NCBI GenBank assembly: GCA_964252035.1
Contig: OZ176208.1
Length of the DNA: 64,000 nucleotides
Direction: 5' to 3' (one strand)
Source of the DNA: Podarcis erhardii
Taxonomy: Eukaryota
A model generated the notes under the pieces. That model was not told where the DNA came from, made no database searches, and saw nothing but the letters and a program-made list of their open reading frames with translations. The position numbers and the translations under genes are program-made. This document shows positions 8,475 through 56,672 of this stretch, piece after piece. Position 1 is the stretch's first letter. The number at the start of each line of letters is the position of its first letter.

Positions 8475-9462
8475 AGTAGAGGGGGAGCTGCTGCAAAACT
8501 CTGCATGATGTGGTGGTTCTCCTGAGTTATTTGTATATGTTACTGATAGTTCAGAATTGAGCCAAACTCATTTTTGTGCTAATTGGGGGGGGGGAGAGAT
8601 CCATAGCTCATTGGTAGAATATAAATCCATTGCAGTCCAAATTCAATCTCTGAATTTGGTACTTCCAGTTAAAGGATCTCCATAACCTTGGGAGCCTGGA
8701 GTGCTAGTTCAAACGCAGGCAAGGTGAGTAAGATGTATAAGGTGGATCTGCATGCAAGTAGTGAGATAACAATAAACTTATTATTTTCATTTATATTTCA
8801 TTTATAAATTTCTCCCACTGAAATCATCAGAGATGCTTTTCATTGGATTGGGCCTAAGGCGATGCTACTACACAGAATAGGGAAAGGCGCTTGATTGGCT
8901 GAAGGGATCATTAGCAGTAGGACAAGGCCTTGACTATTGAGAAATCTCCCATCCCTTTGTGAATTCAATATCCCACATCTCCACTCCCGTTGCTGACCAG
9001 GCTTGATGGGAGGTATTAAAGAGGAGGTGCCCAGTTAACACTACAACCTATTTTCTTGCAGTCATACTAGCTTCTATCCAGAAGCAAGCCCTGGGTAAAG
9101 TGTATCAAACAAGCTATTTGAAACTTCAGAACCTTAGCACTTAAAGTTGATACTAGAAAGCAGGTATTTAGCAATACACAGCAATTTGGAAGTACAGTAT
9201 AAACAACACTACATAGTAGTATTTAAAATGACTGCAGCACAGATCATGTAGTTCTAGCAATGTGGCCAGTGACAGTTTCAGCTGCCTCCGATAAGCTTAA
9301 ATTGCTTTAACCAAACAATAAATCCCTATCCCTCCATAAAAAATAGTTATACTATATCAACTATACTGACATAGTATAGTATGTAACAGTTATAACAGCA
9401 AAGCATGGTTCCCATTTGAGAATGTGCAACAGTGAGCCTTAGGCTCATATGCTGTCCAAGTA

Positions 9463-19528: not shown

Positions 19529-20699
19529 CTAGCAAAGAAAGCATTGGATTAGATAGAGTAGGATTTTGGAGGACCGCTGCTCTTAATTACATATTACTAT
19601 ATCAGTAAGCATACAGGTTATTTAAAATATATTTCAAGCATCAAGACACATAAGACTGCTTCATTTGCCAAAGCATATGAATGTGTATTGGTGCTGTTAT
19701 ATAAATAGAAGGTGTATATTTGGTGATCACAGACAGAACTAGCAGGATTAACAGTAGAACTGCTTGTTCTGTTTCAATTTCTTATTATTTATTCCAGTTT
19801 ATTTATATACTGGTTTTTGTTTTTTTTTGGCCCAAGGCCCCCCGAAGCAATGAATGATATACTAAAATAAAATATACAGTAGAGTTCAGTGAAATGCCAT
19901 AACAATATAAGACAGCAAGATTGCAACATAGGTGGGCCAAATGAAAGCCTTCTGTAGCTAGAAATTAATGGGCACTCTTAACAACCTCATATACCACATG
20001 CTTTGGGGCTAGAAAACTGAACAATGAGAAATACCAAAAAAAACTACCCCAGTATAGAAGAATTAAGGGTGCTCTCACTACCTCCCCATTCTAATTATGC
20101 AGAGGTGCACAAGCAATCTATGTAATTAACGCAAAAGCATTTTTAAAACAAAAATGGATGGTCATGGTGGATCAGTTGCAGGAATTGCTGGAGAAAACTG
20201 ATCATCTGAGCACATCTCAGTCTTGGTTCAGGCCTGGCAGCTTTCTGACAGTATATAACACCCGTGCTGCAGGAACTGCACTCCCTGCCTAAATGCTACC
20301 AGGCCATGTTCAAGGTTTTGTTACTAGTGTACAAAGGCCTAAACAACTTGGGATCAGAGTGCTTCACTCTCAGTTGGCCAACTAGATCACTGATATCATA
20401 AGGAGCTGAGCTTTCAGAAGTACCTTGTGCCTCAGAAATCAAATATATTTGTACCCAGCTCAGTAACCCCTGCAATATGGGAACATTCAGTGAAGGCGAG
20501 GCAGATGATGGCATTGTGTGACTCCTATGTGCCATAAGAACATTTTTATTTAAGCAAACATTTCTAGAATGCCAATTTTATCTAGTCATGTTTAATACTC
20601 TACTGTTTTTATGATGTATGTTATTCTATATTTTAATCTGTTGCTAAATCGTCTAGAGAGCAATGGTTGTATATGATTCTTAAATAATTAAAAATAAAT

Positions 20700-21375
20700 A
20701 AAATAAAAAAATTCCTTCCAGTAGCACCTTAAAGACCAACTGAGTTAGTTCTAGGTATGAGCTTTCGTGTGCATGCACACTTCTTCAGATACACTGAAAC
20801 AGAAGTCACCGGACCTTTCTATATAGTGAGAAGGTGGGGAGGGGTATTACTCAGAAGGGTGGTGGGAATGGGTGATTGGCAGATAGCTGCGATGAGCCTG
20901 TTGACGACTCTTAACGACTGCAATAGGTCTAACAGGAAAAAGCAAGGGGTGAGAAGGTGAAAAATGGCTTTGTCATGTATAATGAGATAAGAATCCAATG
21001 TCTTTGTTCAAACCAGGTCTCTCCATAGTTTTAAGTTTGGTGATAAGTTGCAATTCAGCAGCTTCTCTTTCCAGTCTATTTCTGAAATTCCTTTGTAATA
21101 GAACAGCTACTTTGAGATCTTGTATAGAATGTCCTGGGAGATTGAAGTGTTCTCCTACTGGTTTTTCTGTCTTGTGGTTCCTGATGTCGGATTTATGTCC
21201 GTTTATTCTTTGGCGTAAGGTCTGGCCTGTTTGTCCAATATAGAGAGCTGAAGGACACTGTTGGCATTTTATGGCATACACAATGTTAGACGATGAGCAA
21301 TTAAATGGTCCCGAGATGGTATGTGTGATGTTGTTGGGGCCAGTAATGGTGTTGTCCGGGTGTATGTGGCAGCAA
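20700..21375 (-). mobile_element. Penelope-like retroelement 3' fragment, left arm of palindrome (GIY-YIG endonuclease C-terminus plus 3' pLTR region)
   Basis: Open frame CCHIHPDNTITG...VYAIKCQQCPSALYIGQTGQTLRQRINGH...GLN...HYT-stop; carries a hammerhead motif; TSD TAAAAATAAAT at 20689-20699. Confidence 0.92.
20755..20792 (-). ncRNA. Minimal type I hammerhead ribozyme motif, sense to the SLC10A4 pre-mRNA
   Basis: Exact mirror image of 21947-21984. Confidence 0.85.
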
Positions 21376-22080
21376 ACACCCGGACAACACCATTACTGGC
21401 CCCAACAACATCACACATACCATCTCGGGACCATTTAATTGCTCATCGTCTAACATTGTGTATGCCATAAAATGCCAACAGTGTCCTTCAGCTCTCTATA
21501 TTGGACAAACAGGCCAGACCTTACGCCAAAGAATAAACGGACATAAATCCGACATCAGGAACCACAAGACAGAAAAACCAGTAGGAGAACACTTCAATCT
21601 CCCAGGACATTCTATACAAGATCTCAAAGTAGCTGTTCTATTACAAAGGAATTTCAGAAATAGACTGGAAAGAGAAGCTGCTGAATTGCAACTTATCACC
21701 AAACTTAAAACTATGGAGAGACCTGGTTTGAACAAAGACATTGGATTCTTATCTCATTATACATGACAAAGCCATTTTTCACCTTCTCACCCCTTGCTTT
21801 TTCCTGTTAGACCTATTGCAGTCGTTAAGAGTCGTCAACAGGCTCATCGCAGCTATCTGCCAATCACCCATTCCCACCACCCTTCTGAGTAATACCCCTC
21901 CCCACCTTCTCACTATATAGAAAGGTCCGGTGACTTCTGTTTCAGTGTATCTGAAGAAGTGTGCATGCACACGAAAGCTCATACCTAGAACTAACTCAGT
22001 TGGTCTTTAAGGTGCTACTGGAAGGAATTTTTTTATTTTGTTTTGACCATAGCAGACCAACACGGCTACCTATCTGTAAC
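21376..22080 (+). mobile_element. Penelope-like retroelement 3' fragment, right arm of palindrome, with 41-nt extra 3' tail
   Basis: Reverse complement of 20700-21363. Frame open 21377-21766 (129 aa, GIY-YIG); TSD copy at 22081-22091. Confidence 0.92.
21947..21984 (+). ncRNA. Minimal type I hammerhead ribozyme motif (PLE-associated)
   Basis: GUAU-CUGAAGA-A-GUGUGC[AU]GCACAC-GAAA-GCUC^AUAC. Stem I GUAU/AUAC, 6-bp stem II, palindromic AGCU stem III; predicted cleavage after C21980. Confidence 0.85.
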
Positions 22081-22777
22081 TAAAAATAAATAAATATTCA
22101 GGATAAATTGCAAATTACTAGTGTGGCCCTCATCTGCTACCAATTTATTTATTTATTACTGAAGCGGTACCTTTTGCTACTCCAAATCAAATTCCAGTGT
22201 ATCTTGGGGTGGTAAAATGCCCCCTGAGAAAACCATGTGTGTTGTTGGAAAATCCTATGGGGCATTTATTTTACCCCACCCTTTTTATACTGGGGGGGGG
22301 GGGAGCACCACAATGGCAAAACAACAACAACACACATTTTGTGTCACAAGCCACTTTTCCGCCCCCAGAAATAAAACTGCAAGCGGCTGAAATTTAGAAA
22401 TATTGTTTACTACTATGCATATGGCAATGTCGTAGGAGGACAACTGTGTGTGAATTCCTTCTGTGTAAATTCTGTAACAAAACAAAACAAAAAATTGCTC
22501 TCAAGGCAGGATTTCATCTCGCAATACTGGACGGAGGATCATTGGTTGCAGTTTACACTGTTGGTCCCTCTAGCTTAGCGTTGCCTTCTTTGGTGATTCT
22601 GCAAGACTTCAGATACCAGCAGCCCTGCTAGAGCAGTTCTTCACTTGGAAAGCAAACATGGCACTCGGCAAATAATGCAAAGGGATCCTGTGCCTTCAGG
22701 ACATATATGCTCTCCCACTGTCTCACTGGAGTAACACTTTAATTTCTTTGTTAAAATTTCATTCTTACATTCATATA

Positions 22778-31963: not shown

Positions 31964-32652
31964 CAAACATATATAATAAAAACAAGATCCCAAGGAATCT
32001 CCTGGACTTCCATCCTCCCCTTTGTGGGTCCTTTTATTAATCATTTCCTCCCACATCTTTTTTGGGATCTCAAATTTCAGTGGCACACTGTGCAATGATA
32101 AAATCCGTCCCCCACCTCTCACGCTCCATTCTGCAGCCTTGTTTTGGCACCCTCAGCAGCATGGGACGCAGTGCCAACAGGCTGGTCGTGCCACCTTGAA
32201 ACTGCCTCTGATTGTGGACAAACATTCAGAAGACATTCATGCGTACAGCTAACCAACAGCAGTGTGGTGGCTTGACATTTAGAGCACAATGCCCATTGCC
32301 CTCTCCTGCCTCCCTTTTTAAGAGTAGAGGAAGGACCCTATTCTCATTCATCACTCGCAGTCCCTAATGTGCCGTTGGCTCGTCACCCATATGCAGCCGC
32401 TAAGAATGGCTGTCACGTATTTAAGGGTTTCCTGATATATATATATATTTAAATCCTACTATTAATCAGCAAATGAGAACACAGTGACTCAGGAGGACTC
32501 AGTGTTCTAAAAACTGTTCGTCAGTTCTTCCCATTTACATCCATGGCCACCTGCCCAATTCTGTTCTTGGGCACAGGACTTTTGTCAGGCCCACGAAAGG
32601 GCAATATATGTCACCTTTTACCTTACGAAGGATCCACAATGATAAAGGAAAT

Positions 32653-32808
32653 GTCAAAACAAAATAAAAGAAAAAAAAATTCCTTCCAGTAGCACCTTAA
32701 AGACCAACTAAGTTAGTTCTAGGTATGAGCTTTCGTGTGCATGCACACTTCTTCAGATACACGAAATGTCATTTCGTGTATCTGAAGAAGTGTGCATGCA
32801 CACGAAAG
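32653..32808. mobile_element. Miniature Penelope-like insertion: minus-strand hammerhead plus 3' end, followed by an inverted partial hammerhead copy
   Basis: Near-identical to 20700-20794; 39-bp arms 32730-32768 and 32770-32808; flanking direct repeat AAAGGAAATGTCA at 32644-32656 and 32805-32817. Confidence 0.9.
32725..32762 (-). ncRNA. Minimal hammerhead ribozyme motif in the mini-PLE
   Basis: Reverse complement reads GUGUAU CUGAAGA AGUGUGCAUGCACAC GAAA GCUC AUAC. Confidence 0.8.
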
Positions 32809-33025
32809 GAAATGTCATTTCCAAACAAGATGTGGTGTAATGCTCGCAGTTATGGAGAGTGAGTAGGACTTGTATTTAACCGCAAAAAGGCTGTGTATGT
32901 GTGTGAAGAGCATAGAGCATTTCAGCCATTCATGGAATAGTCTTATTAGCTGCCCTTCACCAGAAGGTCCTCAGGTGGGTTCCAGCAATATAAAATACAG
33001 GATTAATATATTTTGAAACAAATTA

Positions 33026-33256
33026 CAGTGGTACCTCGGGTTACAGACGCTTCAGGTTACATTCGCTTCAGGTTACAGACTCCGCTAACCCAGAAATAGT
33101 ACCTCTGGTTAAGAACTTTGCTTCAGGGTGAAAACAGAAATCGTGCGGCAGCAGTGGGAGGCCCCATTAGCTAAAGTGGTAACTGAGGTTAAGAACAGTT
33201 TCAGGTTAAGAACAGACCTCCGGAACGAATTAAGTTCTTAACCTGAGGTACCACTG
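33026..33256. mobile_element. MITE family B copy
   Basis: TIRs and TA TSD. Confidence 0.9.
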
Positions 33257-33657
33257 TACAATGGCAACTAGAGTGGGTCTTATATGTGTATGCAGGGACA
33301 AAACTAAGCTTTATTTCACCTGGATCAAAGACCCATTTTGGCATCCCTTCATGCACCCCTCTGGAGGCTCCCCCCAGTGCAAAAAACCCAGCTAGCCCCC
33401 CTGTAGCGATGGCACTGCTGTCTGGGTAAGCTGGGAGAGACCATGCTGAAAATGTGAAGAATATGCTTAATTTATAATATAATAATGGCTCAAGTTATTA
33501 GGTATTATAATGTATCTTGATATTTACAGAAATATCCATACTTTAGGATTATATCCTCTCTTTTTGAGAGGGAAATTTTAATATATATATACACACACAT
33601 CCCCATGCACACAGTATAATAAATGGCTCAAGGACAAAGCATAATATCTTTTTCCTT

Positions 33658-56224: not shown

Positions 56225-56370
56225 CAAATCATAAGAGTTAGAAGGCATCCTGAGGGTCATCTAGTTCAACTCCCAGCAATGCAGGAATTCTGAACACAGC
56301 CATCCCTGGGTGGGCTTGAACCACCAATTTTCTGGTTAACAGCCAGACCCACTGACCCACTGCACCACAG
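56225..56370 (-). mobile_element. Short tRNA-headed SINE with a CR1-like tail
   Basis: Reverse complement shows a TGGTGCAGTGG...GGTTCAAGCCC head joined to a CR1-like GATGACCCTCAGG...TCTAACTCT tail. Confidence 0.55.
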
Positions 56371-56672
56371 AGACCAAGCTTATGGAATGTTCAAGATAGA
56401 CCGTTGCAGAAAAGGCTTCCTATTCAGGACAGCAGACATTAAGGAAACCATCAATATTGAGAAGTAATGTGGGGTGGCAATGTACACATACTTCATTGTT
56501 AAGTACTGTACTTTGAAATGCTCGTTTGCCCAACATACATCAGATCTGACCAAGCTTGCATTATCTGCATGAAATGTCTAATCCCTTTACCATGAAACTG
56601 TAAACACGCTGCTAATTGCTTTCAGTCGACTCTCAGAAGCTGTGTTTACAGCATCACTGTAAAGATACTTAC

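What the first reader, a model, noticed from the sequence alone, without database searches (positions are those of the whole stretch)
32644..32821. Ribozyme-only mini-insertion folded back around a copy of its own target site
Seen: (i) ~110 nt of the same PLE family on the minus strand, starting exactly at the 5' edge of the hammerhead (GTGTATCTGAAGA) and running into the 3' region; (ii) a 13-nt linker GAAATGTCATTTC identical to the right-hand genomic flank (32809-32821) and itself a 6-bp hairpin; (iii) an inverted copy of the hammerhead core ending at GAAAG, 3 nt short of the predicted cleavage site; (iv) flanking direct repeat AAAGGAAATGTCA. The result is a 79-bp palindrome with a 1-nt loop. 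Inference: reverse transcription jumped onto target DNA, the target-derived hairpin snapped back and primed the inverted copy. This may be a direct footprint of how PLE inverted termini form. Both breakpoints sitting at ribozyme boundaries raises the possibility of a tiny, hammerhead-delimited, non-autonomous mobile unit.
Basis: partly seen in the sequence, partly recalled or inferred. Interest (0 to 1): 0.8.

Follow-up and report, generated by a model that had tools for sequence, protein, structure and literature searches.

The report
Penelope mini-insertion folded at target hairpin
A young 161-base insertion in a lizard genome is the ribozyme-bearing end of a Penelope-like retrotransposon that copied a small hairpin from its landing site, folded back on it and copied 33 bases of itself, which leaves a readable trace of how one such inverted repeat formed but is not a new kind of mobile element.

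Summary
There is a perfect 79-bp palindrome (39+1+39). There is a 106-nt minus-strand copy of the hammerhead-to-3'-end module of the window's Penelope-like element (PLE). A 13-nt central linker is identical to the right flank. A 33-nt inverted arm ends at GAAAG, and 13-nt target-site duplications flank the whole.

The predicted empty site was found. Contigs from three related species join window 32643 directly to 32805, while the species with zero differences runs into the insertion.

The linker is therefore target DNA, and the palindrome was built at this site. It was not carried in as a pre-formed unit.

Best reading, all within one integration event:
- The cDNA ran off the RNA 5' end, a probable pLTR transcription start 31 nt downstream of a TATA box.
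- It jumped onto the target's 3' overhang and copied the target's own small palindrome.
- It snapped back and copied 29-33 nt of itself.
- It re-annealed through AAAG to the end of the overhang.

Both "ribozyme boundaries" have simpler causes: an RNA 5' end and a 4-nt microhomology. The idea of a hammerhead-delimited mobile unit is not supported.

This scan has noted fold-back PLE mini-insertions many times elsewhere in this genome. My word searches of those notes found none describing a target-derived spacer. Interest is moderate, and the case is a single locus.

The parts
32644..32656 (.). Left copy of the 13-nt target-site duplication (AAAGGAAATGTCA). Its last 4 nt (GTCA) are also complementary to the element's ...UGAC, so the 3' junction has a 4-nt microhomology.
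   Evidence: single copy in the empty site
32657..32762 (-). Long arm: 106 nt of the PLE 3' module. It runs from GTGTAT (the 5' edge of the hammerhead and probable RNA 5' end) to the T-rich region near the tail-less reverse-transcription start.
   Evidence: one substitution and one 7-nt T-run indel against the copy at 21945-22047
32723..32762 (-). Minimal type-I hammerhead motif: helix I GUAU/AUAC, core CUGAAGA, bulged A, 6-bp helix II with a 2-nt loop, then GAAA and palindromic AGCU in place of helix III. The predicted cut lies between 32727 and 32726.
   Evidence: read directly from the sequence; architecture as described in PMC4209133; no Rfam hammerhead hit
32763..32775 (+). 13-nt linker copied from the target; identical to 32809-32821. 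It is the centre of the 79-bp palindrome.
   Evidence: target origin shown by the empty sites
32776..32808 (+). Short inverted arm: 33 nt of hammerhead from GTGTAT to GAAAG, or 29 nt if the final AAAG is counted as target.
32805..32817 (.). Right copy of the target-site duplication. Its first 4 nt (AAAG) overlap the end of the inverted arm.
32808..32822 (.). The target's own 15-nt palindrome (GGAAATG T CATTTCC). It was present before the insertion.
   Evidence: -3.6 kcal/mol on either strand; unchanged in the empty-site contigs of three species
20689..22095 (.). Reference PLE copy in the same window. Inverted arms span 20696-21375 (antisense) and 21376-22080 (sense), with 14-nt duplications. 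It carries the GIY-YIG C-terminus, a TATA box, the hammerhead and a 'tail' on the sense arm only.

Best explanation
This is one aberrant target-primed integration of a short Penelope-like-element RNA, specific to the source species.

Shown:
- 161 bp are inserted into a site that reads ...GATAAAGGAAATGTCATTTCC... in three related species.
- The insert holds the PLE 3' module, a 13-nt copy of target DNA, and a 33-nt inverted copy of the module's 5' end.
- 13-nt duplications flank it.

Inferred order of events:
1. Staggered cuts leave 13-nt 3' overhangs on both target ends.
2. The + strand 3' end (...GTCA) primes on the RNA at ...UGAC, close to the tail-less start site.
3. The cDNA runs to the RNA 5' end at GUGUAU. 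This is probably the pLTR transcription start, 31 nt downstream of a TATA box.
4. The enzyme jumps to the minus-strand overhang of the other target end. It copies GAAATGTCA plus 4 nt into the duplex.
5. The new 3' end, which is the target's own palindrome, folds back (5 bp, 3-nt loop). It primes on the fresh cDNA and makes the inverted arm.
6. After 29-33 nt the nascent end ...AAAG pairs with the last four bases of the overhang. This is the only AAAG in the arm.
7. Synthesis finishes across the overhang, and the overhang's 3' end primes the second strand.

Whether the element's reverse transcriptase or a host repair polymerase made the snap-back cannot be told. The product has no upstream promoter, so it is most likely an inert by-product.
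For: Structure and identities.

Empty site in three species and filled allele in the zero-difference species: table 8.

The target palindrome pre-exists.

The short arm is a subset of the long arm, and the palindrome centre equals the target palindrome centre.

AAAG occurs once in the 106-nt arm, at the observed stop, and equals the first 4 nt of the duplication.

4-nt GTCA/UGAC overlap at the 3' junction.

TATA box 31 nt upstream of GTGTAT, both in the window's full copy and in an independent contig L002.

Contigs of the high-copy module end at 32757-32760. Several read joints place one side of other inversion junctions at 32776 or 32778 while the partner side varies (32711-32742): tables 5 and 8.

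One such joint (32730 to 32772, 8 shared letters, depth 483 in X1) is what a run-off cDNA end ...ACAC snapping back onto its own GTGT would give.

Literature. The Anolis PLE protein cuts and extends both strands and starts reverse transcription internally at two sites, with the 'tail' between them (PMC11167929). The origin of inverted PLE structures is called 'still undefined' (PMC8557442).
Against: This is a single locus.

The first jump lands 4 nt inside the overhang with no microhomology. The element reads TTTCA before GTGTAT and the target reads CATTTC, so the two are one base out of register.

The transcription start is inferred from TATA spacing and from contig and joint ends, not from RNA ends.

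The joints shown are the top 15 of 305. They have short sides (20-27 nt), were laid at 90% likeness, and are partly biased by the reference, whose sense arm starts at 32776.

The hairpin is weak (-0.8 kcal/mol).

The right junction and the palindrome are not confirmed by independent reads.
Confidence: 0.6

Rival explanations
1. Two steps. An ordinary 5'-end-complete mini-insertion (module plus duplication) came first. Later, a replication or repair polymerase folded back at the small palindrome next to it (quasi-palindrome template switching) and added the inverted arm and a second copy of the flank.
For: The simple insertion ...ATACAC|GAAATGTCATTTCC... is fully contained in the present sequence. 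Hairpin-driven template switching is well documented for replication and repair, for example in the papers listed.
Against: The return to the template would be expected at the 8-nt match ACACGAAA, shared by the arm end and the module/flank junction. That would give ...CACGAAATGTCA... Instead the sequence reads ...CACGAAAGGAAATGTCA..., which restores the full 13-nt duplication. That AAAG-G context was available next to the break only during integration. No intermediate allele was seen, but only empty alleles were sampled in other species.
Confidence: 0.15
2. Twin priming. Both target 3' ends primed reverse transcription. [quoted passage not shown] The minus-strand end (...CTTT) primed at AAAG inside the hammerhead, possibly on RNA already cut 3 nt downstream by the ribozyme. 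Both cDNAs ran off the same RNA 5' end and were joined with a filler.
For: The Anolis PLE protein extends both strands in vitro (PMC11167929). There is a 4-nt AAAG/CTTT pairing. Equal inner ends are expected if both cDNAs run off one RNA 5' end.
Against: It does not explain a 13-nt filler that is identical to the target and sits exactly at the symmetry centre. On the minus-strand path the filler would need a template spanning the + strand cut (...GTCA|TTTC...), and that template no longer exists after cleavage. GAAAG is not one of the element's known start regions. Hammerhead cutting was not needed for insertion in vitro, and no RNA ends at the cut site were seen in Anolis.
Confidence: 0.12
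3. A small non-autonomous mobile unit bounded by the hammerhead (retrozyme-like or SINE-like) that transposes as such.
For: The hammerhead-to-3'-end module is extremely abundant in all four read sets (table 2). PLE-derived retrozymes are described in other vertebrates. Earlier notes report many ~130-nt copies that begin at one fixed base.
Against: This copy contains 13 nt of its own landing site at its centre, so the folded unit arose here. It is a single copy, not a tandem. It lacks the TATA block that lies upstream of the module in full copies. The outer boundary is explained by microhomology.
Confidence: 0.04
4. Assembly artefact: a fold-back error in the source assembly.
For: No independent read set spans the palindrome or the right junction in the source species.
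Against: The left junction is supported by an X1 contig. The structure has duplications and junction microhomologies that assembly errors do not create. 79 bp is far below read length for any modern platform.
Confidence: 0.03

Closest known systems
Endonuclease-positive Penelope-like elements (Penelope/Poseidon type, e.g. PAc of Anolis carolinensis) and their 5'-truncated, tandem or inverted insertions
   Same: GIY-YIG C-terminus in the window's longer copy. Minimal hammerhead in the pLTR. Variable 13-14-nt duplications in AT-rich DNA. Reverse transcription starts internally, with an optional ~40-nt 'tail'. An inverted copy abuts the 5' end.
   Different: The second arm is only 33 nt and does not reach a normal start site. 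The arms are separated by a copy of target DNA rather than by element sequence or nothing.
L1 5' inversions by twin priming, and snap-back templated insertions at microhomology-mediated end joining (my own knowledge)
   Same: Inverted segment at the 5' junction of a target-primed insertion, junction microhomologies of a few bases, and templated filler copied from DNA next to the break.
   Different: In classical twin priming the two arms cover different, adjacent parts of the RNA and no hairpin is involved. Here the arms cover the same part, and the symmetry centre is a target palindrome.
Non-LTR retrozymes (tandem hammerhead repeats derived from PLE pLTRs; bioRxiv 10.64898/2026.07.22.740005; Cervera and de la Pena 2020, cited in PMC8557442)
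   Same: A short non-coding PLE-derived sequence carrying a type-I hammerhead.
   Different: Not tandem, no pair of same-strand ribozymes to release a unit, and formed at this site. No evidence of circular RNA.
Fold-back PLE mini-insertions noted elsewhere in this genome by this scan (e.g. s1-217697, s1-238293, s1-214983)
   Same: Young, duplication-flanked, head-to-head copies of the hammerhead-bearing end.
   Different: Those are described as spacer-less or with element-derived filler. Two word searches of the notes found none with a target-derived spacer. This is a weak negative.

Membership tests
Penelope-like element (EN+) | C-terminal GIY-YIG endonuclease with a Cys/His motif just upstream | tested here: met
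   Tested on the window's longer copy. Pfam GIY-YIG scores 28.2 bits against a cut-off of 22.6. It is 81% identical to a Podarcis protein, and the CxHI motif is shared with homologues. The mini-insertion itself is non-coding.
Penelope-like element (EN+) | Telomerase-like reverse transcriptase domain | not tested
   Both copies in the window are 5'-truncated and lack this region.
Penelope-like element (EN+) | The mini-insertion is homologous to the element's 3' module | tested here: met
   106 nt with one substitution and one T-run indel against 21945-22047.
Penelope-like element (EN+) | Insertion signature: duplications, 5' truncation or run-off, inverted 5' copy, absence from orthologous sites | tested here: met
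   13-nt duplications and an empty site in three species.
Minimal type-I hammerhead ribozyme of PLEs | Core CUGANGA ... GAAA, 6-bp helix II with a 5' bulge, no helix III but a palindromic tetranucleotide for dimer pairing, H at position 17 | tested here: met
   CUGAAGA, bulged A, GUGUGC/GCACAC, GAAA, AGCU, then C before the cut. Matches the description in PMC4209133.
Minimal type-I hammerhead ribozyme of PLEs | Match to curated hammerhead covariance models | tested here: not met
   No Rfam hammerhead hit at gathering score or at E up to 10. This is expected for motifs without helix III.
Minimal type-I hammerhead ribozyme of PLEs | Self-cleavage | not testable with these tools
   Needs an in vitro or in vivo assay. 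The short inverted arm lacks the cut site and helix I 3' strand, so it cannot cleave.
Non-LTR retrozyme | Tandem units, each with a same-strand hammerhead, able to release a monomer | tested here: not met
   There is one complete motif on the minus strand and one truncated core on the + strand, with no tandem.
microRNA precursor families | Score at or above Rfam gathering threshold | tested here: not met
   Hits of 20-50 bits against thresholds of 45.6-211. These are generic responses to a perfect hairpin.

The most novel reading that the evidence does not exclude
This locus, together with the recurrent fold-back junctions in the reads, may reveal the general route to PLE inverted repeats. After run-off, the enzyme jumps to the target's 3' overhang as a normal step. 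Whenever the nascent 3' end meets a short complementary stretch, whether its own or target-derived, hairpin-primed synthesis builds the second arm. On this reading target palindromes would act as natural triggers.
Probability: 0.25. Interest if true: 0.6.

Novelty: new variant of a known kind. Interest (0 to 1): 0.4.

Why it matters
How Penelope-like elements finish integration, and why they so often end up as inverted or tandem copies, is stated to be unresolved (PMC8557442). The first in vitro system dates only from 2024 (PMC11167929).

This insertion is a natural single-molecule record with a verified pre-insertion sequence. It shows which template was used at each of three switches.

It also gives a concrete, testable rule: a palindrome at the cut site leads to a target-derived spacer at the centre of a fold-back.

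It adds nothing to ribozyme biology. The ribozyme boundaries here coincide with an RNA 5' end and a 4-nt match.

Tried and rejected
Rfam scans gave no hammerhead hit and only sub-threshold miRNA-like hits caused by the perfect hairpin.

I tried to collect more copies of the family.
- The word-based protein search with the GIY-YIG C-terminus returned only 10 proteins, none above 85% identity.
- A 21-kb Podarcis muralis locus held one diverged copy at 79%, so the source genus is not well represented.
- Two short contigs were fetched. L002 is an older, asymmetric inverted PLE with a 285-nt element-derived spacer and a CTC junction overlap. It was useful only for showing conserved TATA-to-hammerhead spacing.
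- A real genome-wide breakpoint histogram could not be made. I had only the top rows of one read-laying run.

I first took the abundant 235-nt repeat at 33024-33258 for a PLE-mobilised SINE, because reads join it to the hammerhead edge. It has terminal inverted repeats and is a MITE. That idea is dropped.

I considered that the linker might be element sequence upstream of the hammerhead. This is rejected: 13/13 identity to the flank, against a poor match to the element.

Four word searches of the scan's notes and one of the place searches were aimed at comparable cases; none returned a note describing a target-derived spacer.

Full report
**What is there.**

Reading the + strand from 32644, the parts come in this order:
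- a 13-nt copy of the target, AAAGGAAATGTCA;
- 106 nt (32657-32762) that are the reverse complement of the 3' module of a Penelope-like element (PLE);
- a 13-nt linker, GAAATGTCATTTC (32763-32775);
- a 33-nt sense copy of the hammerhead from GTGTAT to GAAAG (32776-32808);
- the target again, from AAAGGAAATGTCATTTCC. Its first four bases overlap the end of the 33-nt arm.

Arms 32730-32768 and 32770-32808 are 39/39 complementary around one base. As single-stranded DNA the 79-mer folds at -46.8 kcal/mol, z = -16 against shuffles.

**Which element.**

The 27-nt hammerhead core occurs four times in the window and never in shuffles. The other two copies sit in a 1.4-kb inverted structure at 20.7-22.1 kb. 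That structure encodes the C-terminal GIY-YIG endonuclease of a PLE:
- Pfam 28.2 bits against a cut-off of 22.6;
- 81% identity to a Podarcis muralis protein;
- other lizard and turtle relatives.

Downstream of its stop codon lie a TATA box, the hammerhead, a T-rich stretch and an AC-rich end. The mini-insertion matches this module from GTGTAT to ...TTTTGAC, with one substitution and a 7-nt T-run difference.

The ribozyme has the minimal PLE architecture described by Cervera and de la Pena (PMC4209133):
- core CUGAAGA;
- a bulged A;
- a 6-bp helix II;
- GAAA;
- a palindromic AGCU instead of helix III, so it would act as a dimer;
- a predicted cut after GAAAGCUC.

Rfam's hammerhead models do not detect it, as expected for this type. 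The only Rfam responses at the finding are sub-threshold miRNA-like scores caused by the perfect hairpin.

**The empty site.**

I laid contigs of four runs from four organisms on 32000-33400. In X2, X6 and X12, single-copy contigs pass from window position 32643 to 32805 with consecutive contig positions (table 8). They carry no differences between 32581 and 32845.

Over the left flank, the X2 contig has 15 substitutions in about 642 nt (2.3%) and the X12 contig 38 (5.9%); the X6 contig covers less of it (4 in 209 nt). X1, with no differences over 637 nt, runs 33 nt beyond 32649 into the masked A-rich start of the insert. This is consistent with the filled allele.

The insertion is young and lineage-specific. 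The linker is a second copy of DNA that was single-copy at this site. The target also already contained a small palindrome, GGAAATG-T-CATTTCC.

**What follows directly.**

The centre of the 79-bp palindrome is a copy of this site's own DNA. The folded structure was therefore assembled here. It cannot have arrived as a pre-formed palindromic unit.

The short arm is entirely contained in the long arm, so it can be a copy-back of the long arm's cDNA but not the reverse. The symmetry centre coincides with the centre of the target's own palindrome, which is what a hairpin-primed fold-back predicts.

**Geometry.**

A 13-nt duplication implies staggered cuts that leave 3' overhangs. The + strand is cut after ...GTCA. 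The minus strand is cut to the left of AAAG.

The linker spans the + strand cut (GTCA|TTTC). A continuous template for it exists only on the minus strand of the right-hand end, as overhang plus 4 nt of duplex.

That fits a nascent + strand which:
- copies the RNA;
- then copies that overhang;
- then copies itself;
- then copies the overhang again.

It does not fit a nascent minus strand. This is my main argument against twin priming with a filler.

**The three junctions.**

- **3' junction.** The target end ...GTCA overlaps the element's ...TGAC by 4 nt. The start lies between the short (tail-less) and long (tailed) ends seen on the two arms of the 21-kb copy. This is in line with the two internal start sites and the 'tail' reported for the Anolis element (PMC11167929).
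- **cDNA to target.** ATACAC is joined to GAAATG without overlap. The element reads TTTCA before GTGTAT in three independent arms, so the apparent TTTC match is one base out of register.
- **Inverted arm to target.** The arm ends in AAAG, which is also the first four bases of the duplication and hence the last four of the overhang. AAAG occurs only once in the 106-nt arm, at that spot. So the first chance for a 4-nt pairing with the overhang's end is exactly where the copy-back stopped. The '3 nt short of the cleavage site' coincidence needs no ribozyme.

**Why the inner breakpoint sits at the hammerhead edge.**

Earlier notes on this genome (s1-234774, s1-234773) proposed that most copies begin at one base in front of the ribozyme because transcription starts there. 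I could test this only in part.
- TATATAG lies 31 nt upstream of the G of GTGTAT in the window's full copy. The same spacing is present in an independent, diverged contig (L002).
- Contigs of the very abundant module end at 32757-32760 in two read sets (table 8). This is what a shared 5' end would do to an assembly graph.
- In the listed read joints, one side of other inversion junctions sits at 32776 or 32778 (GTGTATC or GTATC), while the other side varies (32711-32714, 32730, 42).
- One joint (32730 to 32772, 8 shared letters, depth 483 in X1 against about 6 for single-copy DNA) is the signature of a run-off cDNA end ...ACAC snapping back onto its own GTGT.

These rows are a small, partly biased sample: the top 15 of 305, with short sides, laid at 90% likeness. 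They agree with run-off at an RNA 5' end followed by fold-back.

**Rivals.**

- **Post-insertion replication fold-back.** This is possible. It would more naturally have returned through the 8-nt match ACACGAAA, giving a product that is not the one observed.
- **Twin priming.** It has biochemical precedent, since both strands are extended in vitro, and it explains equal inner ends. It leaves the target-identical, centrally placed linker unexplained and lacks a template for it.
- **A mobile hammerhead-bounded unit.** The target-derived centre contradicts it, and the TATA block is missing from the insert.
- **An assembly artefact.** This is unlikely given the duplications and microhomologies. However, the palindrome is not confirmed by independent reads.

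**Limits to generalising.**

In the 21-kb palindrome of the same window, the 12-nt spacer reads CCHI in the antisense arm's frame. That matches the CxHI motif of homologues, whereas the other frame gives CGSK. So the tail-less arm is 12 nt longer at the centre, while only the other arm carries the ~44-nt tail. Neither arm is a subset of the other, so a simple snap-back cannot have made it. Two primed cDNAs are needed.

The mini-insertion therefore documents one route to PLE inverted repeats, not necessarily the main one.

**Verdict.**

- Observation: confirmed, including the empty-site prediction.
- Mechanism: snap-back at a target-derived hairpin during integration is the best-supported reading (about 0.6).
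- Mobile-unit idea: not supported.
- Classification: an ordinary kind of element with an unusually informative junction.
- Interest: moderate. Its value would rise if a genome-wide census showed the same rule at other palindromic targets.

Noticed in passing
window 20696-22080: In the large PLE palindrome, the 12-nt spacer (21364-21375) belongs to the antisense, tail-less arm: its frame reads CCHI like homologues. Only the sense arm carries the ~44-nt tail. Neither arm is a subset of the other. One testable idea is two reverse transcriptases in tandem on one RNA: the leader starts at the proximal site, and the follower starts at the distal site and stops about 12 nt behind. This predicts that the spacer always belongs to the tail-less arm.
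   Followed up: partly
window 21914-21947; L002 476-511: A TATA box lies 31 nt upstream of GTGTAT and is conserved in a diverged contig. The bases just before the hammerhead (CTTCTGTTTCAG) also look like a 3' splice site. This recalls the Drosophila virilis Penelope intron, which ends at helix I (PMC4209133).
   Followed up: partly
window 33024-33258 (also near 9460, 22790, 28600, 30470, 62860): A 235-nt MITE with terminal inverted repeats starting TACAGTGGTACCTC. There are six copies in the window at 84-91% identity. In all four read sets it is even more abundant than the PLE module. Many contigs join its end to its start (33258 to 33024).
   Followed up: partly
reads laid on window 32711-32780 (tables 5 and 5c): Several recurrent junctions join the antisense PLE 3' module to a sense hammerhead starting at GTGTATC or GTATC. 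One of them (32730 to 32772) appears at depth 483 and only in the source-like organism. This suggests many independent or amplified fold-back mini-copies.
   Followed up: partly
reads laid on window 32756-32761 joined to 33018-33024: In all four organisms a few contigs join the hammerhead 5' edge to the start of the MITE. This may be a MITE inserted at the TA of GATACAC in some PLE copies. It remains unexplained.
   Followed up: no
L002 1-598 (ENA assembly ERZ27260045): An older inverted PLE: 145-nt arms, 94% complementary, with a 285-nt element-derived spacer and a 3-nt CTC overlap at the junction. A called 'protein' (P0008) reads antisense hammerhead fused to sense GIY-YIG.
   Followed up: partly
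window 56301-56374 (minus strand): Rfam tRNA match at 48 bits. It may be a tRNA gene or a tRNA-derived SINE head.
   Followed up: no
window 32434-32450: A short (TA)n tract that differs in length (ATAT insertion) in one contig of the source-like read set.
   Followed up: no
protein P0003 (Eublepharis macularius, annotated CD94-like): This annotated lectin-like protein has a C-terminal part that matches the PLE GIY-YIG domain at 66% identity. It is probably a gene model that runs into a PLE fragment.
   Followed up: no
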